The position numbers were made by a program, and so were the translations under genes. A DNA stretch of 64,000 nt from Phallusia mammillata (taxonomy: Eukaryota): NCBI GenBank assembly GCA_965637545.1, contig OZ281495.1, positions 27,590,001 through 27,654,000 on the forward strand, written 5' to 3'. Below the pieces are notes generated by a model. The model had not been told where the DNA came from and made no database searches. It saw only the letters and a list, made by a program, of their open reading frames with translations. Of the stretch, positions 21,148 through 63,100 are shown in pieces (the first letter of the stretch is position 1; the number at the start of each line of letters is the position of its first letter).

Positions 21148-23486
21148 TTACTTTTTGATCAGCAAAGCCATTGAGGCTGTTTGCTTGCAGCATGGGCATG
21201 CAGCACAAGGTTGTGAAACTACCTCGTTAGCGCAGGTATAGCAGAAGTTGTTGTGGCCACAAGGAACTAGGGCTGCTACCACTGAGCCTTCTCCACATAT
21301 GATACATCTTTGTGGCAAACGTTGCTTGCCAGTGGTCTCCATTGCTCTAGCTGTCAAGTGGCTAAGAGCACTGCTTGTTTCAATGGGAGATCCAGATGTT
21401 AGACTGTCTGTGGCTTCACCTGCAAAAACCATTAACACTGATTACACAACTGATCACCGAAAATACTAACTATGAACAATATTGTTAAGGGTTATGTTTT
21501 TTATTTACCTGATGAATATCCACTCTCAATGTTTAAAGCAGGTGTCATGGCAAAACTGCTGAATGGGCCCAATCCATTTATGGAGGAATGGTCAATGCTG
21601 CTGGTTGATGAATCAACAGAGTCTGAACCAACCCTTCTGACAGGATTGTGGCTGTTGATGTTGGAAGGCATAAACGGGGGCAGGATGGAAAAATCTGGGT
21701 CTGACAGTGTAGGAGATAAGCGCTGAAGACCGTTATTTCCATACGATGAAGTGGGGCTAAATCCACTGCTGGTGCTGCCTCCAGTGCTTCCTGTAGCACT
21801 GCTGCTTCTCATTGGAGTAAATGGGAATTGTGTGGCAGCACTGTTGATGTTATCTGGCTGATTATTTTGAGATCCGGTGCTCCATGCAGGGGTTGTGTTT
21901 AGGCCAGCTATGCTGCCAAGTACAGTGGAAGGGATGTTGTCAGCTTGTTCGAAGGCACTTGAGGAATAGGAAAAGCCAGGAATGAAGTTCGGTGCAAAAG
22001 AGGAATCTGGAAAGAAAAGCAAAAAAAAATGTTTATTTTCCTGTTCGACCTTTTAGTTACTATGTGGCTATGACAACCCTTACCTAAGTTGTTGTTCATT
22101 TGATTGGCTTGTGACATGGATAGAAGGTCTGATTGGTGCAGATTTTGAGCACCAGCGTTGGATGGAATAAAGCTAGGTGCTTGTGAGCGAAGAGCACTGT
22201 TCACATTGTTGGTGTTGTAAGGCAAGAAGGCTGATGATGTTGAAACCAGTGAACTGCAAAAACAAATGGATAAAAATCAATTTCAATGTAATGTGCTACA
22301 ATAATACATCTACCACAAAAGTGTTTAAATAAAAGTATATGTAGGAAAGCAATGAATTACCTCGTCTTGTACAAAGCATTGGAAACTGAACTTGTTGGTT
22401 TGATTTGAGCTTGCAATGGGCTTCCTACTTCAGTGCCATTGTTTTTGAAGTCGTCATCGACACTGACTTGCTGGGTGCCAGTACGTGCAGCAATGTGCGC
22501 TTCAATTTCCTCTTTGGCCTTTTCAACATTTTCAGGCAGTCCTGAATAGAAAAATGTCAAATTTAAACCTTTGATTGATCATACATATACATCATATATT
22601 ACTTTAACAGACATTTACATACCTGTAACTTCAAACACCGGTTCCTTGTCACGGCTAGGTGTCACAATGTATGTGTGGGTTTGCTGCTGAATTCTTTTTA
22701 TGGTAGCACCCTTTGGGCCAACAACCAAGCCCACAACTCGGTAAGGCACACGGACTTGCAGTGTTTTGGTGCCTGCATTGCCATCGTTAACATTGTGTCC
22801 ATTCATTAATGCAGCATGTCTGTTTCTGGAAGCTCTGCGAAGTATAATTGACCCATTAATTACAGTAAAACAAGACAGATTTTTACTGGTAAAATTTAAC
22901 AACAGTTACACATTTGTTTGTAGTTTTCTTTTGAAATGATATTTACCTGATTTGTGTGAAATGCTCTGCAGCAGATTGGACTTCTCTTCTTGCCATTGCC
23001 ACATCTTCCTTTCGGCCAGTAACAACAAACACTGGCTCCTCACCCCTCACTGGTGTTTTGATGTAGGTGTTTGTTTTAGCACGAAGGGCCTTTATTTTGC
23101 AACCTGAAAAAAAACAAAATATACCATTTTAATACGCAGCAATGCTTTTTTTACATTACATAGTCCTAAAGTTTTTTAACATGCAACTCGCCAAGAAATG
23201 TTTAAAAAACAAACCAATTTTTTAAATTATACATACCTTGGCGGCCGACGATTTCTGCAACATGTTCAGAGCTTGGTACTGGGACACATTCAGTCATATT
23301 TTGACTTTTCTTGTTTTTCATAGCCTCATCAAAACTGGAAGTAGATCCATCATCATCGCAATTGCCCAGCAATCCAAGGTTCGATAATTCCAAAGCTATT
23401 TGCAAAGCGCGCTGGTCTTCCTGCGTGCTGCCGACGGTCGGTTCCGAAAAGACGGTCGGGCTTTGCATCACGACTTCTGCCTTCAT
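21148..23486 (-). CDS. MEX3: MEX3 / pem-3-like RNA-binding E3 ligase (2 KH domains + C-terminal RING), 579 aa
   Basis: Exons 23486-23237, 23103-22947, 22834-22623, 22541-22361, 22253-22084, 22006-21509 and 21419-21148. All introns are GT-AG, phases are consistent, and the total is 1740 nt. Motifs: [15 protein letters not shown]; KH1 [46 protein letters not shown]; KH2 [45 protein letters not shown]; [22 protein letters not shown]. Confidence 0.97.
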
Positions 23487-29501: not shown

Positions 29502-30857
29502 CGCACACCCATAATTCTGCCATTCAGTATCCCAATAGTTGGTGTGACCTTCCGACGACCTTTACTTAGAAACTCATAAGTTATGAATAGAAAAATAGTT
29601 TTCTTTGCACTGCCAGGCAACCGAAAATCGCTTCCGCGCTGGTGCTTGCAACCGACCCTGTGATGTAACGATGACGTCAGCTGCACAAATGACGCGCAGT
29701 GTAATAGAGAGCAACAGCATGACTGACACAGGAAGTTCGCGGAACGAAACGAACTTACTGGCAAAAAGGCTTCCTTCCGGGTGGTTAAAAATCACCGAAA
29801 CTGGATTTTGCGGTGGAATATTATGCACTGCTTAGAAGATTGGGCCTTGTTTGGTCACCACCCAAGGCAAAACTGCAACTGATCTTTAGCCCGAGTACTT
29901 GTGCGTATATAGAATACTTTAGGCAGATGCAACAGCGATTATTAAAACGTCTGCATGATGGCAGTTACGTTTTTGATGAAATAACTTTTCAAGTCCGTGT
30001 ATAGTGTTCTTAAGTCTTTCGCTATTATTTCAGAAGCTTTTTCAACGGAAAAAAAATCCTACATTCATATGTAATGACAGTACTTGTAAATGTAAAACAC
30101 ATTCAGCTTGTCGAAATTTAAAATGAATTTGAAGTGCTGAAAAATAGGTTGTCAACGTTTTTTCTCTCGTTTATCAAGTGGCATAGAAGTAACATCTACT
30201 ACCAAGTTTCTTTATCACGCTACTCAAACACACCCACCCAAAATAGCGTCTGTTCATATTTACTCCAACAACATAAAGTGAAATTTAGCCCTGGTTAAAA
30301 ACCCATAGTTGTTACATAACTAATTCGTCAATACATGGGCTGTGCAAAAACAGCCACCAGACAAGACGTTTGCATTTTTTTCCAGTACATTTAGTGGGTC
30401 ATTGAAGCCACATCGACCAATACATGCGACCTATTTTCTAAACATTAAGATAAACATGACAAAAAAATCTCATGTGAAAAGTGGACACCTGTTCTGATGC
30501 AACATTGTTACGACATCGAGGTGTTAAAAACACAAGCGTGGCCTGAATTTCTATGACTAAGCTAACGCCGCATATTGGCTGCCACAATGTTTCAAGGGCC
30601 GCCAGCATTTCAGGGTATGTGTGTTTTCTGACCGAAGTGCCACAAGACAATTGGCATGCTCCAACGTATGTTTAACGAAACTCGCCTCTTTACAAAAAAG
30701 TAGGGACATATATTCAGTTCTACAAATGACAAGAGACATGCGATTGCGCATTAAAATGGACACAAATTTATCTTTGAAATCGTGCAAATCTAAAAGTAGT
30801 TTTTAGTTACTCCTTTATTGTATTCCGGGTTACTATCGACATGGTCCCCAACATAAG

Positions 30858-31004
30858 TGTAGTGAATTTGTGACGTATTTATACGCTTGGGTGGTTTTCT
30901 ACTACGTAGTCTTTCTTGTACCTCTCCACCTTCTTGGAGGTCATTCTAGTTACGCGCGCGTGCTGTGCGGTTGTGCTTTTGGCTCCTGGCAATAAAACAC
31001 TACA
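30858..31004 (+). repeat. 5' LTR (147 bp)
   Basis: Base-by-base identical to 34016-34162; AATAAA near the 3' end. Confidence 0.98.
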
Positions 31005-32092
31005 TGGTGTCAGAAGTGGGATTCGAACCCACGCCTCCATTCGGAGCAATGAAGGACATTCAACTGGAAAGAACAAATGTGACTTTAATCGCTTATGGCG
31101 GATCAGTAATCCGCCCTGTTGGAAAAGTTAATTTAACATGCACGTACAAGAATAAAGAAATCACGGAAGTGTTTTACGTTGTCCATTCAAATTCACCACC
31201 AATTTTGGGGTTAAGACCAAGCATAGAGTTGGGCCTAATAAAAATACTGATGCAAATAAATAAAAATATTCCCTGTCAAACTCCCGACTATCTGTGTAAA
31301 GAATATTCAGATGTGTTTGAAGGTATTGGATGTTTTTCAGAGCCTTACCACATTATTTTAGACAACAGTGTTCAACCGTCCGTAAGTCCACCAAGACGTA
31401 TACCGTTTGCTATTCAGGAAAAAGTGAAAGACGAACTCGACTACTTAGTGAAAAAGAAAATTATTGAACCTGTATGTGAGTACACTGACTGGGTAAACGC
31501 AATTGCAGTTGTTAAAAAGAAAAATGGTAGTGTTCGCCTTTGTTTGGATCCACGTCCTCTTAACAGAGCAATCCAAAGAGAACATTATCAACTACCAGTT
31601 ATTGACGACATTTTTAGTAAATTATCTGGTGCCAAATACTTTTCGATATTAGACGCACGATCGGGCTATTGGCAAATTCCGCTCGACTCAGTTTCCTCAA
31701 AACTTACTACTTTTAACACTATTTTCGGAAAATACAAATTCTTAAGAATGCCATTTGGTCTAAAAATGGCCCAAGACGTTTTTCAACAGAGAATTGAACA
31801 AGCCTTGCATGGTTTACCCAAACAAGCTGCCATAATCGACGATATATTGCTATGGGCGGACACGTTAGATGAAGCAATAGATAACTTGAGACAAGTGCTG
31901 CAACGTTGCCGGGAACAAGGTATTAAACTTAATCTTGACAAATGCAAATTTTGCTGTCCGAAAGTAGAGTATTTTGGACATGTGATCGGCCAGAATGGCA
32001 TTCAGCCCAATCCGAAACGTATTGAGGCAATATCAAAAATGAAATCGCCAACATCCCTAAAGGAACTTCAGTGTTTTTTCGGGAATGGTTAA
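31004..32092 (+). pseudogene. pol: pol 5' part: C-terminal half of aspartic protease plus reverse transcriptase
   Basis: RT motifs DWVNAIAVVKKKNGSVRLCLDPRPLN, FSILDARSGYWQIPL, RMPFGL and IIDDILL. The protease D[ST]G catalytic motif is missing. The frame ends at a +1 frameshift near 32074-32084. Confidence 0.9.
31005..31046 (-). other. 42-nt reverse complement of the mature tRNA-Leu(CAA-type) 3' half, including CCA (extended PBS)
   Basis: The minus strand reads CTCCGAATGGAG-GCGTGGGTTCGAATCCCACTTCTGACA-CCA, i.e. variable arm, T arm, acceptor strand and CCA. No D arm or anticodon is present. Confidence 0.9.
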
Positions 32093-33947
32093 CTACTTGC
32101 GCAAATTCTCGCCGCAGGTTTCCGAAGAGACTTCTGTGTTAAGGCAATTACTCCAACACAAGCAGTGGTGCTGGGAAACAGAACACGAAACAGCTTTCAA
32201 CGCTGTAAAGAAACACGTTACTCAAACCGGTAAAGTACTTAAATTTTACGACTCTAATTCGCCATTAAAAATTCAAGTGGATGCATCGCAACATGGTTTG
32301 GGCGCTGTCTTGTTACAAGACAATGGTCCTGTCGAGTATGCATCCCGAGCATTAAGCGAAACTGAACAAAAGTACGCACAAATTGAAAAGGAAATGCTAG
32401 CAATAGTTTTTGGGTGCGCAAAGTTTCATCAATATATATATGGCCGACATTTTTCAGTTGAATCCGATCACAAACCTTTGGAAATCATCTTCAAGAAACC
32501 GATTTCGACAGCCTCTGCTAGACTGCAGCGAATGATGATAAAGATTCAAGATTACGATTTTGCTGTTTCGTTTAAACCTGGAAAAGATATCCCGATTGCA
32601 GATGCCCTATCTCGAAACCACCCTCAAAACAGTGACGAATCGGACCAATGTGACAACAATTTGCATGTTAATTTTATAGATTTGCCATCAGATGGGATTC
32701 ATGATCTCAAAGAAATTCAACGCGCTGTTGAGATGGACCCATGTATGCAAATGCTTAAAAGGTATATTCTTCACGGTTGGCCCACCGCGCGAAATTCATG
32801 CACTCCGCAGACACGTGATTTTTGGGGATTTCGAGACGAACTGTCTGTAACAGAAGATGTCCTGTTAAAAGGTGAGAGAATCGTTGTTCCTTCGTCTCTG
32901 AGACAACTTGTCACAAAACGCATTCATGGTGGACACATGGGAATTGTAAAGTGTACAGAAAAAGCACGAGATTTGTATTTCTGGCCCGGAATGACAAATT
33001 GCATCCGTGATTACATTGCCAAATGTAAAGTTTGCCAATTGTTTCAAAATAAGCACCCAAAAGAACCCTTAGTCAATCATGAAATACCTAGGACGCCATG
33101 GGAGCAAGTCGCTATAGACCTATTTCAATGGAATGGAAATGAATATATAGTTGTAGTGGACTATTACAGCAAGTATTTTGAAGTGGTTTTGTTGACAACT
33201 ACAACTAGTCCAGCTGTAGTTTCTCATTTAAAATCTTTATTTTCAAGGCATGGGATTCCGAAGGTTATCATATCAGACAATGGTCCGCAGTTCAACAGTC
33301 AAAACTTTAAAGATTTTTGTACAAATTGGAACATATTACATAAAACATCGAGTCCATTATATCCACAATCAAACGGTTTGGCCGAGAGAACTGTACAAAC
33401 TGTAAAACGTTTGTTAGATAAAGCCTTCAAGTCTAATGAAGACCCGTATTTAAGTTTTTTGCAGTACAGGAATACGCCGATCGGAAACGAAGGCTCGCCA
33501 GCGCAATTGCTGATGGGGAGAAGATTAAGAGAATTGTCACCTATGACATCCAGACATCTTGAGCCAAGGACTGTGCCTGTATCAGTCGCACAACAATATA
33601 TGCGTGAGAGGCGGAACCAACAGAAGAAGTATTTTGATAGAGGTGCTCGACCACTTCCACCACTTCAAACTGGAGACAAAATCTATCACCGACGTGACAT
33701 AAATCTAGAACCGGCCACTGTTATCAAAGCCTCTCACAAGCATCGTTCTTACATCATCAAGGATAAAAAAGACGATTTGCTCAGGCGAAATCGACGGTTT
33801 CTGTACAAGGCTCGGTTTGAGCCCATTATCCCTCACACAGAAGATGTCGAAAGAAATGATGACGCTCGGAGTGCTTCACTGGAAGGTTCAACATACCACA
33901 CTCGGTCTGGTCGGACTATACACGCACCGCAGCGATTTAGCGAATAG
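32085..33947 (+). pseudogene. pol: pol 3' part: RT thumb/connection, RNase H, integrase (HHCC + DDE), no chromodomain
   Basis: RNase H: VDASQHGLGAVLLQ, IEKEMLAI, SDHKPL. Integrase zinc finger: HGGHMG..CKVC. Catalytic core: VAIDLF, ISDNGPQF, NGLAERTVQ. Confidence 0.93.
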
Positions 33948-34015
33948 TGTTACGTATTTTTCGTTTTGTCTATTATTGTTATGTTTGTATTTACAATCTT
34001 TCTGAAGAGGGAAGA

Positions 34016-34162
34016 TGTAGTGAATTTGTGACGTATTTATACGCTTGGGTGGTTTTCTACTACGTAGTCTTTCTTGTACCTCTCCACCTTCTTGGAGGTC
34101 ATTCTAGTTACGCGCGCGTGCTGTGCGGTTGTGCTTTTGGCTCCTGGCAATAAAACACTACA
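34016..34162 (+). repeat. 3' LTR (147 bp)
   Basis: Preceded by the PPT, followed by TSD ATAAG. Confidence 0.98.
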
Positions 34163-35838
34163 ATAAGGACAACCGAAAAATTAAACTTTCATACGAAACG
34201 AAACAAACTTTTTTGAACAAATCTTTGCATTTATACGACCCTAACATATCACATGCCATGTTTTTTTAGCCAGAAACAATCTATACCAGCAACTCTTTGT
34301 TCGTAGAAAATGTACTTCGTGCATCTCACGACAGCTCAAGTTTTGGTTTACTTTTGCTTGTAGCAGGAACTTGACATGTAATTGTTAAAAAAAAACAAGA
34401 ACATTTCTTAGAAATACGGATAATAAATTTTTCTAAGACGTTGTCCTTTAAAATAAGGACAAATCTTAGAAATAAAGACGGTATGGCAACCCTGAGTGTA
34501 TTGCTTTTTTAACAGTTGCCGAATCTTAGTTCAGTAACTGTAAAAGGTTGAAAAGCGTTGCGCAATAGGATTTTAAAAAGTACAAATTCCTCACTAGTTT
34601 GTGAAAATAATTATTTTTAAAGGCATTATGATTTTTTTATGACGAACTGCTTTCATTTAGTGAAAAAGCTATGGTGCGTGAAAGTTCAATACCGTGCGAA
34701 AAATCTCACACTATATATCAGCCTAAAATACTAGGTACTGGTAACATGGTGGAAACGGTAGCAACTCTATTTTGAAAAGCAACCGACGCTATAAACAAGC
34801 AAAAATTATAGCTTTGCAATCTTTGTTAACGATTATTTTTCGCCTTTGCGGTAAATTAAGAAACCTGTTCTAAATTTAAAAACCGAATTCTATATTTAAC
34901 AATAGAGTAGGTTACTGTGCCAAAGATGTGACTTCAAAACTGTTTTAATTCTGTGTCAAAAATAGAAATGAACGCAAGATGTGCAGAAAACAATATATTT
35001 TTAACATACAGTAAGACTTTATGAACAGATTTTAACACGATTTTGTGGGTTTTCTTAAACGGATCTGACCCTAAAGTCAAGTATTGTCGGCGAATTTAAC
35101 TGACCGGACCGCAATTTTAGTGAGCTTTACGTCAGGACTGTTACGTCAGAAACCAGGCCCGAGGGCTTTAAGTTCTATATATCCGCCGTTTGCCGGAAGA
35201 AACTGAATTGGACTTCTAAAAATCTAAAATTACTAGGTTGTTAAATTTTGGCCCTCACATACCTTTAAATAGCAACACAACTTATTTTTACAAACTGGAG
35301 CCACTGCAATTCATTTTGGCTCATAAGGCATGTTTGTATGGTTAAGTGTACGAAACCATTAGACGCATTGTGTACATTCGTCATTTTTCACCACAGCCTA
35401 AAATTGAAATTTTTTAACACACCATCTACGCAAGTGGGTCCAAAGTGCGTATATTTAGCATCGCTAAAAAATTGGGTGAGCTATTTTCGTGTGTTAAGTC
35501 GGTTTTGGTGGCAACAGTCGATTTTGTAATAAATGTGTGTTATGGCAATATGCAAATGCACAATGGATAAAAATTAACCGAAAATGCTTCCTTACTTCAT
35601 TTCCATATCTCGACCGCCAGTTTATATTGAGGGGAATTACTAAAAGACACGAAGGTTTCCTAAGATTTAGTAAAGGACAAAATAAGCAATTAACGTAAAC
35701 TGATTTAGCAATAGCACAGGACTGACGAATAGGAACAGGCCAAAACGTTAAAAATCCCACTTTTCAAATATACCAGCGTTTTTATGACAAAGCAAAAATT
35801 TAAAAAGTCCGTTGCTATCCGAAACGCACAACATTCAA

Positions 35839-36125: not shown

Positions 36126-39100
36126 CGTAGTGTTTGTTTTTGCAACAACAGGCACGGTGCTTTCCAGGATGAGCAAACAAACAAAAGTAATTTGCTTAAC
36201 TCTAAAACAAACGCAATTTGCATTGATTTTGCATCGCGTTTTGGCGTTGACCTCTAGGTTACAAACAAAGCTGTTTACGTTTACGGGACTGAAATTAAAC
36301 TGCAAATTTCTGAAGGTCATTGAGGTAAAATATTCTGATGCTCTTTGTATTGATTTTGTACACAGTGTGTACTTTGTATGATCTACGGTTTATTTGGTTA
36401 CGCTGTGACAACGTTAAGGTTAAAAATATTAAATACATAAATAGTAATAAACATCAATGTACTGTATTGGCATTTGCTTTGAACCAACCCACCGCGAAAT
36501 GAACTGCGGCTTTCGGCTCAAATCGACATATTGAAACTCAAGCCATTTCGATGTATCTGATCATCGTATGTTTTTGGGCCCGTTGGTGTACGTGACATAC
36601 TGAACATAAGTTACTGTGGCCAATACGCCAACACATGGTTAGTAATGTATAGATGGCTACTCATGTATGTTCACGCTTGGTTTCTGTCATATGGGCTTCA
36701 ACAAAACAAAGACTTTGGTTTACAACTAAAAGGTAATGAACTGATTTTTTGTGGTCCATAAAAACATTTTTTGTGAGGTTCGAACCCACGACGCTATAAA
36801 GATACGAATTTAAATCATTTTTTTGCGTATGTATATGGGTCAAGCGCACTGGGTTAATACTGATGGGCCAAGACATAGTTTAACAGGCAAAACATTAATT
36901 TAAATTTCTCTTTAGGTCGAAAAACCCTTATTCAACGGGTGGCTCCAAAATACGCAAAATACGGAATCTAGAAATAAAACTTAAAAATGCTGACAGCAAG
37001 GGCTATTATACGGCCAGGTTTGTAAACACTATATAATTCAACTTTATTTTCTTACAAGCGTTAACTTGCGGTACTATATGATGTGTTCACAAACCCTCAC
37101 CCCGACCATAAAAGCCCTAACCGTAAACATTTAAAAAAATTCCGTACGTTTTATAAGTAGATTGCGTATTTTGGAGGAGGCTTTATTCAACGGGCGGCTT
37201 TTTTGTACATCCCTGCCCTTTCAATCAACCAAGGACTTGTACGTCAAATGAAAATGTACGTCAAATGCACCACCTGTTGTAGCAGATGTACGCGGTAGGA
37301 CAATCATAAGTGTGCTTGTTTTAGAGGGCAGCAAAAATGGTTCTGCCAAAATGAGTTGCAACAACTGTAAAGGATTATAGCCATGCTGTTTGTTGTTTTA
37401 TGGAAGCGCAATGTTTAACTTTAAATGCCCACCATGTTTTGGTTTGAGCTTAAAATACGCTGCCAGAAGCGTCGAAGCTGACATGTGGGTTTATGTGCAA
37501 TACGACCAAATCTGACACAACATGACTTGCTATTCGAATGATTGTCAGCGTGAAAATTGGGGATAAACATACAATCCAACACTTGCGCGAGAAATGCAAA
37601 ACAATACCCTAAAATTGAGAAGTAATTTTTTAAATGACAAACAGTTTATTTTGTTTATTAGCATCACATTAGCAATTAAAGCTGTAATCCACTTTTTCCG
37701 TAATGCGGTGCATGAAACGTAGGCCTTACTCGATACGGTGTTACGAAGAAGCAGTGTTAACCACAGTCGGAAATGTTAGGTTATGTTTGATATAGAAGGG
37801 GCCGTAAATACATTTGGTAACTACATAATTGCAGTTGTCTATAATTCAAACAGTTAGCTTACAACAAAATATTTAGTTATTTTAGCTTTATGTGAGCATC
37901 CATTCACCTGGAAGTCTTACCAAAAAGCAGTGTACTACGCATAGGCCTATACGTATTTGAAACTTAGCAGCCATACGCCCGACAGGATGTTGGCTAGTGT
38001 TAAGTTACGTTAAGCAACAAAACACCGTCAGTTGCAAACACATTTCCCCTCCTTTACCCACGAATACGATATACCGCATAAAGTTCCACAGGAATTGGTA
38101 TACTCATTCGCGCAAGCTGTTAACCGTACAACCGATAGGCTATGTCTAAAACTAAAGCACAGCATGAACGGTTTAATTTCTTGAGAGAAAACTGCATTTG
38201 GTTGTAGACGGGAATTTTTATAATTATGGTTGTTTAAGAAAAGTACATAAAGTTGCACAAATTGTGAGCCATGTTCGTGCATGCATCTAGCCGTATATAC
38301 AGCCGGTAGGCTATCTAAAACTATAGACCTGTGTGCCCGGTTTAAAAATCAACAACAAACTACCTTTTGTGCCTTGAAGGGGGCACATTCATACAATTTA
38401 TACAATTCCCATCATACAATTGTTTAAAAAGGGTGCATACTTTAAGTGTCTGGTAACACCTTTGATAATATAGGTAGCCCCCTGCGAGATACTTGCAACG
38501 CTCAACGGAGTGTCTTTTCAAACAATTTTAAAGCAACGTGTTCACTGCAAGTTCATTAACTAAATTGTCAAAAAATTGCAACAAGCCGATTTTTAGAGCA
38601 GCAATCAACTGTGTGCAGCAAGATGGCGTTTTTGACGTTTCCGTTTAACACGACTCGGATTGCAGGATAAACTTGTGGTCCAGGGTTCGTCTGACTTGAA
38701 CCACGAGTTTTACATCAATCTCATAAAAAATATTTTTTTAAAACCGAAGCGCAGCAAATGGCAGAGGTATATTGAAAAATTGGAAATTACAATACCGTGT
38801 TAGGGGTCTTTGTAACTGAACCACCAACATAACAAGTTGTAAAAAATATACATCAGATTCTTACTTAATACAAAACTAGCAGTATTGGCAATGTTGGAAA
38901 AACAGTCGAGTGTATAGCCATTGGTTTTCAGTTACCAACCAACCCAAATTTACTTGGCCTTTCCTACGCACAGTAGATACGCCCCTGTGGCAACCGTGGT
39001 CTTGTCGCCTTATTGACATTGCGTCATTAATAAACTAGAGATATTTACCAAGCCATAAATCTCACTTGGGATAAAACGAATCCAGATCAAATAGTGCTTT

Positions 39101-51860: not shown

Positions 51861-52169
51861 TTATTCTTGGAATTTTCCTAAAATGTCTGTGTCGCGGAAT
51901 AAGAAGTAATCCTCATTTTCCAGTGTAACAGTTGTGCCACCATATTCAGGCAAAAGTACTTTGTCACCTGCCGCAACATTTAACGGGCGGACCTTTCCAT
52001 CTTTGTCTGCCAAACCAGGCCCAGTGGCTACAACGGTAGCTTTTAAAACTTTACCACTGCTTTTCTCAGGGATGACAATTCCACCTTTCGTTCTTAGTTC
52101 TGGAGCAAATCTTTGCACAAGCACTCGGTCGAAAAGAGGCATAAACTTCTTGAAAGCTTGAGATGCCAT
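51861..52169 (-). CDS. HSPE1: 10 kDa mitochondrial co-chaperonin HSP10 (GroES family), 102 aa, CDS intronless
   Basis: MASQAFKKFMPLFDRVLV..TKGGIVIPEK..VVATGPG..GDKVLLPEYGGT..FLFRDTDILGK. There is a probable 5'UTR intron at 52585-52186 (GTATGT..TACAG). Confidence 0.97.
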   Translation of the reverse strand: MASQAFKKFMPLFDRVLVQRFAPELRTKGGIVIPEKSSGKVLKATVVATGPGLADKDGKVRPLNVAAGDKVLLPEYGGTTVTLENEDYFLFRDTDILGKFQE

Positions 52170-60125: not shown

Positions 60126-63100
60126 ATGTCTTATTTTAACCATATCGCACTGTCACAAGTTACGATGACTGACCAAGTTGTAAAGATAGCAGAAATTGAA
60201 AATGGAAAAGTTGTTGTCAAATGGGACCGATTGAAAGAAATCTTTAATCGGAGTGATTTGGAAAAATTACCAGTTCTTATCTATTCCATTTCTGGAAAAG
60301 CTCGTGGTGGCAAATCGTTTTTGCTAAATATTATATGGAGATTTTTGAACAGCAAGTACTCTCAAGTTAACCAGGTTGGTTTTAAAATCCATGTTTTGCA
60401 ATTAGGTTTGCTTCGTGTTAAAAAATACTTTAACTGACTTAAAAATGTTAATAAAATGTTGCTTGTAAATGCATGAAGCTTGTTTTGCTTTACTGCGAAA
60501 CTGCTGCACTTAGCATGTACCAAGCTTAGCAAATATTTTTGTGCGCTTTTTCGTTTTCTTTGTTAACGCCATGTAATTATTTCAAACTTCAGAAAATTTA
60601 AAGTTGAAAATTTTTCGTTTTTGCACCTTATAGTTATTGTAGTTATCCACGCATAGGACGCAGCCAGTTTGTTTGGAGGCTTTTTTGTGCCGTTAAGTAG
60701 AAACGTGGTGTTGATGCTGATATGTGGTGGGTTGCAATGTGCCCTTTTAACATTAATGTTTTTTTGTATTGGTTTTTGCGAGCTTTCACATAATTCGGAT
60801 AAACAGTTTTGGTATAGCGAGTTGGCATGGTGGTTTCGTTTGCAAGGTTAATAATTAACAGCACCGCCAAAAATTGCCAGGCCCAATTCCAATAATTTAG
60901 GGTTAATTCCAATGCCCCGATTTCATTACAAATCTTCCTTTTTTCAGGAGCCCACTGACGATATTCCAAATATATTCTCTTCTGCGCATCAAGTTGAGCC
61001 AGCTACAGTTGGGATTGATATTATGAAAGAACCATTTATAATCTGCACTGCGCGTGCGGATGTAAGTTACCATTGGGACGCGTGTCTCTTTATAGAAACA
61101 ACTATTAGGAAACATTTAAAATAGCAAAGTATTTTAACATTACAATAACTATACAGTAATCTAAAATGTATACTTTCACTGCAGTATATCAATATCTTTA
61201 AACCATTACACCGACAGTAAATTAAATAACATTTTTTTTGTTTATTCCTACGCGCCTTTTGTCCGTTCATTTTTATCAGTGTTTCCGCCATTGGTTTTTA
61301 CAACGCTTCTGCCGTTCTTATCTACCTTCTTTTGCCCCGCGCCACAGATTGAGCGTTTTTCCCTTTTTTTCCTTTTCTTTCCATCTTTACTAGTGCGTGT
61401 TTGGCCGCGCCATCTGCAGGTCCCAGTTCTACCTTACTGTCAGCAGTTTTTAATATGTTTGTTTGTGCTTTATAGTTAAACTTGCATACCATTTTTTAGC
61501 GCTGTTTTGTTTTTAGATACTGACGATGCCTATTACTTAGGCGAAATATAAATGTCTAATAAAACGGTGGACGACTTCAGACTTGTCAAAGTTTTCAGTC
61601 TATTACACCGACAGTGTGCAGTATTTCTTATGGACACACAAGGCAATGAGGCAGATAAGGAATCCACTTTACAGGATCCGCACATTTTTGCGTTGAGCGC
61701 TTGGCTCGGTTCTTATCAGATCATAAACGTCAATCGACGAATTGACTGGGGCGAGGTTGATTCGAAAGCTGTGAGTAAACCCTGATGGTGACCAAAGTTA
61801 TTCATTACCTGTGATAACGAACAAGCATCAAACATTTAGGGGTATTGTGTGCACGTACAACAAAACAGCAAGGACATCGACCCATCGAAGCAACCACACT
61901 CTGTAAGCATTCTATATTTTGTTGCGTAGTTTTGTTGTGAAAACATTGACAAACCTTGATTTTTAGAATTTGCTGTTGTTGGTTCGAGACTGGCCAAAGG
62001 TCCCGACTATTTCACACGGCCTAGAAGGTGGAAATAAGTATTTTGAGCAGGTTGGAATTTATCGTTGCGGTTTTTAGCAACCTTTTTAACAACATAACTT
62101 TGTATTCCTAAGTTTGCCTATTTATTTGAAGAAATATGCCGAAGCTAGTGATGAAATGAAGGACCTTGTAACAATTTACAAGAAAGTTAGTTGTTTTATT
62201 CTTCCCCATCCCGGACTTCAAACAAGTGAAGAAGGCTGCCACCAATGGTCTGGTGTGTAATAAGACAACATCTCCATTAACTATTAAATCTGTTTGACTC
62301 GAATTGAACGTTAAACCTCCGATGCAGAAATACTAACGCAGAAGTGTTTTTGTCACCGCAGTTGTACGAGATGAATGCCGAAAAAGTATCACGAATCTTT
62401 TTGAGCAACTCTTCTCGGAAAGTACGTTGCAAGGCTTAGCAGAGTGCTCGCTAACAGGCAGCGACATGTTGGCGCTTATTGAAAAATTGAAAAATCAAAA
62501 CAACTTGAGTACAACAGAACCAGCAATATCTGGACAATTTCAGGTAAAGTTAATGGGATAACACCTTTATGTCAGGAGGAAAGTGTATATAGTAGGCTCA
62601 TATTTCCGAAAATTGTTTTTAAGAGTTACAAGGACATCTACATGGATAGGAAAATGGAACGTTGCGTTGAGTCGTACGAGGAAAAAATGAAAACTCAGGC
62701 AAACACAAAGAATATTTTGGAATGTGTTATTAATGTTCAGAATCGAGCATCTGACAGAAAAAAATGTTTGTTTTCTAAACACATTTTTCCTGCTTTTATA
62801 CTGTTATGTTTTTCCAGCTAAAATGTTAGTGATTGTTTTTGTTTAATGGCCATCAAAAGTGTGTATTCTTCAAATCGTAAAACGAGGGACACAACTTTAG
62901 ATTTTTATGCACCTGGTTGCTTGTTTTGAATTCTGCTTGTCGCCATTAATCAATTCCACACCCTTCTTTACAGATAGTCGAAAATGAAAACATATCACAA
63001 TTACAACAACGACACGAACGTATTCACGAAATTGTAAAGGAAGAATTTAAAGAAGAAAAACTAATAATAACAGATGAGTACATGAACGAATTTTGCAACC

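What the first reader, a model, noticed from the sequence alone, without database searches (positions are those of the whole stretch)
30858..31100. Gag-less gypsy element whose PBS is a 42-nt tRNA-Leu copy fused into the protease: fossil of a strand-transfer error
Directly after the 5' LTR come 42 nt exactly complementary to the mature tRNA-Leu 3' half, from CCA through the T arm into the variable arm (31005-31046). The next base already lies in the C-terminal half of the protease (AMKDIQLERTNVTLIAYGG...). The leader, gag and the protease D[ST]G motif are absent. Normally plus-strand strong-stop synthesis copies only about 18 nt of the primer and stops at m1A58. The inferred mechanism is that RT read through an under-modified tRNA and then transferred by microhomology into pol, deleting everything in between. 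Such deletion-plus-tRNA-insertion products are known from retroviral single-cycle experiments. Intact LTRs, PPT and TSD show the product was integrated by the normal integrase. If multiple copies share this junction, it would instead be a propagating non-autonomous family that supplies RT/IN and borrows Gag.
Basis: partly seen in the sequence, partly recalled or inferred. Interest (0 to 1): 0.85.

Follow-up and report, generated by a model that had tools for sequence, protein, structure and literature searches.

The report
Truncated Gypsy element with tRNA footprint
A young 3.3-kb copy of a Ty3/Gypsy retrotransposon in an animal genome has a 42-base copy of its primer tRNA-Leu(CAA) joined straight onto the middle of its protease; this is most simply the scar of one faulty reverse-transcription event, a neat natural example of a known error and not a new kind of element.

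Summary
Two identical 147-nt LTRs (30858-31004, 34016-34162) with TG..CA ends, a 5-bp target duplication and a polypurine tract enclose 3,011 bases. The first 42 of these (31005-31046) are the reverse complement of the 3' end of metazoan tRNA-Leu(CAA), including the CCA. They match 41/42 to a published human isodecoder. Pol homology resumes about 17 residues after the point where relatives carry the protease D[TS]G motif. About 334 codons (gag and the protease start) and the leader are absent.

Nine relatives whose 5' ends I could read carry gag. Seven have a tRNA-Leu-type PBS of only 9-18 nt and two use other tRNAs. None extends past 18 nt. The antisense orientation, the start at CCA directly after U5, and the faithful copy across A58 fit read-through of the primer tRNA during plus-strand strong-stop synthesis, followed by an illegitimate transfer into pol.

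No sister copy of this family was found in any collection. Microhomology at the junction, the parent element and the number of copies sharing the junction therefore could not be tested. A one-off product cannot be told apart from a small non-autonomous family.

Verdict: real, explained by a known mechanism, moderately interesting.

The parts
30853..30857 (+). Left copy of the 5-bp target-site duplication (ATAAG)
   Evidence: Read directly; the same five bases follow the 3' LTR.
30858..31004 (+). 5' LTR, 147 nt, TG..CA ends, 7-nt terminal inverted repeat, AATAAA 8 nt from its end
   Evidence: 100% identical to the 3' LTR.
31005..31022 (+). Canonical 18-nt primer-binding site, complementary to tRNA-Leu(CAA) positions 59-76 including CCA
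   Evidence: The same 18 nt form the whole PBS in L001 and L002.
31023..31046 (+). 24 further nt copied from the same tRNA: the complement of A58, the rest of the T arm, two linker bases and the whole variable arm
   Evidence: 41/42 to the published human Leu-CAA-2-1. No relative has this extension.
31047..33947 (+). Pol remnant: protease lacking its start and catalytic motif, then RT, RNase H and integrase. It is broken once by a frameshift, with no internal stops in either piece. The first in-frame ATG is at 31049.
31049..31249 (+). Protease remnant (approximate bounds), from after the missing D[TS]G to the conserved ILG region
   Evidence: Alignment with 24 relatives. The protease domain was placed in relatives by Pfam and by match coordinates. 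The remnant itself has no Pfam hit.
31511..31987 (+). Reverse transcriptase domain (Pfam RVT_1)
   Evidence: E 3.5e-25, full model length.
32172..32555 (+). RNase H domain (Pfam RT_RNaseH / RT_RNaseH_2)
   Evidence: E 1e-30.
32886..33365 (+). Integrase: H2C2 zinc-binding domain and catalytic core (Pfam Integrase_H2C2, rve)
   Evidence: The HHCC and D,D,E residues can be seen in the translation.
34004..34015 (+). Polypurine tract, 12 purines directly before the 3' LTR
   Evidence: Read directly.
34016..34162 (+). 3' LTR
34163..34167 (+). Right copy of the target-site duplication (ATAAG)

Best explanation
This is a defective copy of a single-ORF Ty3/Gypsy retrotransposon that uses tRNA-Leu(CAA) as its primer. 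The junction was made during reverse transcription. Plus-strand strong-stop DNA normally copies 18 nt of the primer tRNA and halts at methylated A58. Here it ran on through the T arm and the variable arm, 42 nt in all, probably on a tRNA or tRNA fragment that lacked the methyl block. The extra 24 nt had no partner at the PBS of the minus strand. Synthesis was therefore completed at an illegitimate site about 1 kb downstream, inside the protease. Either the overlong 3' end primed there, or the growing minus strand jumped early onto the overlong tail. Leader, gag and the protease start were lost. The product kept both LTR ends and was integrated normally, giving the 5-bp duplication. Shown: the anatomy, the tRNA origin and orientation, the missing region, and the normal state in relatives. 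Inferred: the read-through, the lack of methylation, the site choice by microhomology, and the timing. As it stands the copy cannot make capsid or active protease, and its pol is frameshifted, so it is not autonomous.
For: (1) The tRNA copy starts with the complement of CCA directly after the LTR's terminal CA. CCA is added after transcription in eukaryotes (established knowledge), so the source was a mature tRNA and not a tRNA gene. (2) The copy is antisense on the element's plus strand, as expected when the primer attached to minus-strand DNA is the template. (3) The base opposite A58 is the correct T, which fits an unmethylated A58. PMC8599865 shows that m1A58 is needed for the strong stop, and that synthesis past position 54 gives DNA that no longer matches the other strand. 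(4) One end of the deletion coincides exactly with the end of the tRNA copy, which a single event explains without coincidence. (5) Nine relatives with readable 5' ends have gag. Seven have a tRNA-Leu-type PBS of 9-18 nt and none is longer. Complete relatives are 4.56-4.65 kb with 176-183-nt LTRs and one ORF of about 1,300 aa. The window copy is 3,305 bp and lacks about 334 codons. (6) Identical LTRs, the duplication and the polypurine tract show ordinary integration of a recent product. (7) Apart from one frameshift, pol is open with its catalytic residues in place. Pol without gag would not be kept by selection, so this fits a recent origin from an active parent.
Against: No parent or sister copy was found, so neither microhomology at the junction nor an 18-nt PBS in this family itself is shown. 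The relatives used are only 45-55% identical in pol. The copy stops 42 nt into the tRNA, which is not a known hard-stop position, and the reason for stopping there is unexplained. The host's own tRNA-Leu(CAA) was not available, so the single difference from the human sequence is unassigned: host isodecoder, copying error or later mutation. PMC8599865 argues that over-extended products cannot be integrated; here one would have been rescued. The frameshift could mean that the source RNA was already defective.
Confidence: 0.7

Rival explanations
1. The junction arose as described above, but this copy is one of several. It would belong to a small non-autonomous family that inherited the 42-nt PBS and the gag deletion and was copied using the proteins of full-length relatives.
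For: Identical LTRs and a clean duplication show that the RNA behind this copy was reverse-transcribed and integrated normally. A 42-nt PBS would be inherited through the minus strand (inference from the standard replication scheme). The frameshift in pol would be expected if pol were no longer needed.
Against: There is no second copy or solo LTR in the 64-kb window, and no match to the junction or to either pol piece in any collection searched. These collections seem to lack the host genome, so this is weak evidence. Pol is nearly intact, which is unexpected for a lineage that has propagated without needing it. In relatives gag starts 12-100 nt after the PBS. RNA packaging signals may therefore lie in the deleted region (inference).
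Confidence: 0.2
2. The 42-nt complementarity is a functional extended primer-binding site of this lineage, comparable to the extended or bipartite tRNA contacts of Ty1 and Ty3, and the gag deletion is a separate event.
For: Ty1 and Ty3 RNAs pair with the T arm of their primer in addition to the acceptor end (PMC5371799).
Against: Those contacts are split boxes, not one contiguous perfect copy. None of nine relatives has more than 18 nt. The deletion would have to end by chance exactly where the tRNA complementarity ends.
Confidence: 0.04
3. Assembly artefact: reads from a tRNA-related sequence and from a Gypsy pol were joined wrongly at 31046/31047.
For: Nothing positive. Read data cannot be inspected with these tools.
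Against: The join sits inside an element with identical LTRs, a matching duplication and a polypurine tract. The tRNA copy begins at exactly the PBS position. There are no Ns in the window.
Confidence: 0.03
4. A free tRNA was captured by template switching during minus-strand synthesis (as in hairpin-induced tRNA-mediated recombination in HIV-1), or a tRNA gene recombined with the element at the DNA level.
For: tRNA insertions that replace deleted segments are described for HIV-1 and MLV (summarised in PMC12220202).
Against: Copying a free tRNA into the minus strand would leave the tRNA in sense orientation on the plus strand; here it is antisense. The copy starts at CCA exactly at the U5 border, the primer's own place. 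A tRNA gene would lack CCA.
Confidence: 0.02

Closest known systems
Single-ORF Ty3/Gypsy elements of fish and marine invertebrates, annotated 'K02A2.6-like' or 'Gypsy retrotransposon integrase-like' (e.g. goldfish locus L007, metagenome loci L003, L006, L008)
   Same: Same pol domain order and 45-55% identity. Short LTRs with TG..CA ends. PBS complementary to the 3' end of tRNA-Leu. Short leader.
   Different: Relatives are 4.56-4.65 kb with one gag-pol ORF of about 1,300 aa and a PBS of 9-18 nt. The window copy is 3.3 kb, lacks gag and the protease catalytic motif, and has 42 nt of tRNA complement. I suspect these belong to the Mag lineage; this comes from memory and no reference sequence was tested.
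Retroviral deletion mutants made by errors in plus-strand transfer, and tRNA sequences found in retroviral DNA (Pulsinelli and Temin 1991; Colicelli and Goff 1986; HITME recombination; Gurgo and Franchini 2025)
   Same: Primer or other tRNA sequence copied into the DNA product, together with loss of internal sequence. Dependence on the m1A58 stop (PMC8599865; PMC12220202).
   Different: Those cases are laboratory observations in retroviruses. Several concern other tRNAs, circular forms or sense-oriented inserts. This is a fixed genomic copy of a retrotransposon. The two oldest papers were not readable here, so the comparison with them rests on citations and on my memory.
Non-autonomous LTR elements (LARD, TRIM; ETn, which depends on MusD)
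   Same: LTRs, PBS and polypurine tract are present without a full set of genes. ETn is copied by MusD proteins (PMC7472051).
   Different: Those are multi-copy families. Here only one copy is known and most of pol is retained.
Extended or bipartite primer-binding sites of Ty1 and Ty3
   Same: Element RNA is complementary to the T arm of the primer tRNA as well as to its 3' end (PMC5371799).
   Different: Those are separate short boxes that are conserved within the family. Here there is one uninterrupted 42-nt copy that is absent from relatives.

Membership tests
LTR retrotransposon, Ty3/Gypsy (Metaviridae) | Direct long terminal repeats with TG..CA ends, flanked by a short target-site duplication | tested here: met
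   147-nt LTRs, 100% identical; 5-bp ATAAG duplication.
LTR retrotransposon, Ty3/Gypsy (Metaviridae) | tRNA primer-binding site after the 5' LTR and polypurine tract before the 3' LTR | tested here: met
   The tRNA-Leu(CAA) complement starts at 31005. Purine run at 34004-34015.
LTR retrotransposon, Ty3/Gypsy (Metaviridae) | Pol order RT, RNase H, integrase | tested here: met
   Pfam RVT_1, RT_RNaseH, Integrase_H2C2 and rve in that order.
Autonomous Ty3/Gypsy element | Gag (capsid/nucleocapsid) coding region | tested here: not met
   Pol homology starts at the equivalent of residue ~335 of ~1,300-aa relatives, and only 42 nt lie between the LTR and that point.
Autonomous Ty3/Gypsy element | Protease with catalytic D[TS]G | tested here: not met
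   The motif is present in 137/140 relatives about 17 residues upstream of the window's start and is absent from the window translation.
Autonomous Ty3/Gypsy element | Uninterrupted pol reading frame | tested here: not met
   One frameshift; no internal stops.
Product of primer-tRNA read-through in plus-strand strong-stop synthesis | Antisense tRNA copy that starts at the complement of CCA directly after U5 and continues past position 58 | tested here: met
Product of primer-tRNA read-through in plus-strand strong-stop synthesis | Parent family has a normal PBS of at most 18 nt followed by leader and gag | tested here: inconclusive
   True for nine relatives at 45-55% pol identity or with a similar LTR end. 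No copy of the same family was found.
Product of primer-tRNA read-through in plus-strand strong-stop synthesis | Short homology between the end of the tRNA copy and the parent sequence at the rejoining site | not testable with these tools
   This needs a full-length sister copy, and none was found.
Propagating non-autonomous LTR family | Several copies at different loci sharing the same internal junction | tested here: inconclusive
   One copy in the window. No match to the junction in viral contigs and no sister proteins. The host genome appears to be absent from the searchable DNA collections.

The most novel reading that the evidence does not exclude
The copy is one member of a lineage that has spread without gag and with a 42-nt PBS, relying on capsid and enzymes from full-length relatives. 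That would make a strand-transfer error the founding event of a new non-autonomous family. It would also show that a PBS needing the T arm and variable arm of the tRNA to unfold can still work.
Probability: 0.15. Interest if true: 0.6.

Novelty: new member of a known kind. Interest (0 to 1): 0.4.

Why it matters
The m1A58 stop on the primer tRNA is a textbook step of reverse transcription, but its failure has been studied almost only in the laboratory with retroviruses. This integrated retrotransposon copy records such a failure at single-base resolution: which tRNA was used, how far it was copied, and where synthesis resumed. It is a natural data point on how deletion derivatives of LTR elements arise. 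It also hints that under-modified tRNA can be used as a primer in the germ line of the host. As a single copy it remains a curiosity. Its value would rise if a genome-wide survey showed many such footprints or a family descended from this one.

Tried and rejected
Searches for sister copies all failed:
- BLAST of the LTR, the 42-mer, the whole element and both pol pieces against the window found only the element itself.
- Exact look-ups of both pol pieces found no record.
- A word-indexed protein search with the downstream pol piece gave a best identity of 51%.
- An exhaustive representative search with the upstream piece gave at most 49%.
- A profile of the upstream piece plus a full-length relative, used to reach proteins of about 1,300 aa, gave no hit above 55% to either piece.
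- DNA scans for the junction (viral contigs), for the tRNA-sense 39-mer and for an LTR end plus a 28-nt tRNA complement all returned nothing.

The one metagenome scan returned two contigs. They share the LTR terminus I had put in the pattern, but they belong to a different family: 32% identity over 72 aa of RNase H.

The host tRNA-Leu(CAA) is unavailable. There is no tRNA gene in the window and no paper prints the exact variable-arm variant.

Pfam does not recognise the protease remnant itself, so it is assigned by alignment with relatives.

I wondered whether the Phe-Gly encoded at the end of the tRNA copy marks parental sequence and hence a longer microhomology. The alignment with 24 relatives does not place it in the matching column, so I dropped the idea.

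Rfam's full-length tRNA alignment across 31008-31083 (20.5 bits, below the gathering score) takes its score from the 3' half. The supposed 5' half is pol coding sequence.

Three old papers and Pulsinelli and Temin 1991 are not held.

The two pol pieces were never joined. Each was searched on its own.

Full report
**Anatomy.** The window holds one LTR element at 30858-34162 (3,305 bp).
- Its two LTRs are 147 nt and identical.
- The LTRs begin TGTAGTG and end CACTACA.
- The element is flanked by ATAAG on both sides.
- A 12-nt purine run lies directly before the 3' LTR.
- There is no other copy, solo LTR or related pol anywhere in the 64 kb.
- The window has no Ns and no tRNA gene, and no Rfam family reaches its threshold.

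**The tRNA copy.** Bases 31005-31046 were compared with published tRNA sequences.
- They are the reverse complement of the last 42 nt, CCA included, of tRNA-Leu(CAA).
- Against the human Leu-CAA-2-1 sequence printed in PMC10359600 there is one mismatch, and no shuffle of the window gave a match.
- A mouse Leu(CAA) probe printed in PMC7997516 is identical over its first 36 nt.
- Four Drosophila Leu(CAA) genes in PMC4536317 share the T arm and acceptor strand but have another variable arm.
- The single mismatch is in the variable loop, the part that differs among these species. It may simply be the host's isodecoder; I could not check this.
- The Rfam tRNA model recognises the T arm and acceptor strand at permissive threshold.
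- The 42 nt consist of CCA, discriminator, 3' acceptor strand, whole T arm, two linker bases and the entire variable arm.
- Homology to the tRNA ends there; the next bases do not match the anticodon stem.
- The 19th base, opposite A58, is the correct T.

**What follows the tRNA copy.**
- From 31047 the sequence is pol. An in-frame ATG lies at 31049, and the frame also stays open upstream through the tRNA copy into the LTR.
- Pfam finds RT, RNase H, the integrase zinc domain and the integrase core in the usual Gypsy order.
- Pol is interrupted by one frameshift and has no internal stops.
- The catalytic residues of RT, RNase H and integrase are visible in the translations.
- I searched the two pieces apart and did not join them.

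**What is missing.**
- The exhaustive representative search places the start of the window's pol at about residue 335 of relatives of about 1,300 aa.
- In 137 of 140 such relatives the protease motif D[TS]G[AS] lies a median of 17 residues upstream of that point (alignment).
- The window has no such motif.
- Relatives with a Pfam protease hit show that roughly the first third of the domain is gone.
- Two complete relatives are 4.56 and 4.65 kb, with 183- and 176-nt LTRs and a single gag-pol ORF.
- The window copy therefore lacks the leader, gag and the protease start, about 1 kb in total.

**The normal state in relatives.** I could read the 5' end of nine related elements.

| Locus | Source | PBS found |
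|---|---|---|
| L001, L002 | metagenome contigs with the same LTR terminus | exactly the 18-nt Leu(CAA) PBS, then a 14-nt leader, then the gag ATG |
| L003 | relative | 18-nt PBS matching Leu(CAA) at 16 of 18 positions |
| L007 | goldfish | 13 nt |
| L008 | closest relative, 51-55% identity | 11 nt |
| L006 | relative | 10 nt |
| L009 | relative | 9-10 nt |
| L004, L005 | relatives | a different tRNA |

All nine have gag directly downstream, and none has more than 18 nt of tRNA complement. These relatives are distant, however, and are not the parent family.

**Mechanism.** The copy is antisense, sits exactly where the primer sits, and starts with CCA, which eukaryotic tRNA genes do not encode (established knowledge). 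It was therefore copied from the mature primer tRNA during plus-strand synthesis. PMC8599865 shows that m1A58 is required for the plus-strand strong stop. It also shows that synthesis beyond position 54 gives DNA that no longer matches the other strand. A 24-nt unmatched tail explains why synthesis had to be completed at an illegitimate site. It also explains why one end of the deletion coincides with the end of the tRNA copy. Two variants fit equally well. In one, the overlong plus-strand end primed inside the protease region of the minus strand. In the other, the growing minus strand switched early onto the overlong tail. The faithful T opposite A58 suggests an unmethylated A58. Why copying ended after 42 nt is not explained; a primer fragment ending there is one possibility (inference). 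A capture of free tRNA during minus-strand synthesis, as summarised in PMC12220202, would leave the opposite orientation and is rejected.

**One event or a family.** This is the open point. No sister copy was found by any route.
- Exact look-ups returned nothing.
- Three protein searches gave a best identity of 55%.
- DNA pattern scans returned nothing.

The window's Hsp10 protein is in the protein collection, but its contig is not on record. The host genome therefore seems to be missing from the searchable DNA, and absence of hits says little. The nearly intact pol argues for a recent origin from an active parent, because pol without gag has no obvious way to be kept by selection (inference). 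The frameshift and the identical LTRs are compatible with either reading.

**Host.** The window also carries an intronless mitochondrial Hsp10 gene. Its best named matches are ascidians at 71-72%, with bivalves at about 70%. The host is an animal, probably a marine invertebrate; I cannot say more. Nothing suggests human sequence.

**Literature.** Related laboratory observations exist: tRNA between the LTRs of a circular MLV DNA, tRNA-mediated recombination in HIV-1, and tRNA-Gly next to deleted HIV proviruses (PMC12220202). My recollection that it describes read-through into the primer followed by aberrant transfer is from memory. I found no report of such a footprint fixed in a retrotransposon copy, but the library is incomplete.

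- My tool calls used the same bounds as queries, and my reasoning noted the residues around it.

**Verdict.** The class of event is known, so this is a new natural example and not a new kind of element.

Noticed in passing
window 51864-52169 (-): An intronless 102-aa mitochondrial Hsp10/Cpn10 gene (Pfam Cpn10, E 1.5e-27). The exact protein is in UniRef/nr. The best named relatives are ascidians (Ciona 72%, Styela 71%), with bivalves at about 70%, so the host is an animal of uncertain phylum.
   Followed up: partly
window 60126-60434 (+): An ORF with a weak match to the N-terminal domain of guanylate-binding proteins (E 0.0055, below Pfam's cut-off), with a P-loop-like GKSFLLN stretch. It is probably an exon of a GBP/atlastin-type GTPase.
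   Followed up: partly
L002 1-330 (-), contig MKWU01007186.1: This unrelated Leu-primed Gypsy copy seems to carry its own internal deletion. The protease DTG motif is followed within about 100 nt by RNase H-like sequence, with RT missing. The break lies a similar distance after DTG as the window's junction, possibly by coincidence.
   Followed up: partly
L006, L007, L008, L009 (5' ends): Several relatives have a tRNA-Leu PBS of only 9-13 nt. If their plus-strand strong-stop DNA also copies 18 nt of primer, it would routinely end in an unmatched tail, as is known for Ty1. This clade may therefore be prone to untidy plus-strand transfers (inference).
   Followed up: no
window 30992-30997 and 34150-34155: The only AATAAA in the LTR lies 8 nt from its end. 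Cleavage at the usual distance would then fall outside the 3' LTR, so U5 would be very short or transcripts would read into flanking DNA.
   Followed up: no
window 36773-36790 (+): An 18-nt stretch resembles the T-arm complement (16/18 to the element's tRNA copy). It is a chance match or a decayed tRNA-derived repeat, with no LTR context.
   Followed up: partly
window 31075-31083: Read on the minus strand, this bit of pol pairs imperfectly with the 3' acceptor strand of the tRNA copy. As a result Rfam draws a full cloverleaf of 20.5 bits across 31008-31083. It looks like chance; the stretch is protease coding sequence.
   Followed up: yes
window 21504-22022 (-): A 173-aa Ser/Thr/Pro-rich ORF with no Pfam match, among the longest ORFs outside the element. 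It is possibly an exon of a low-complexity protein.
   Followed up: partly
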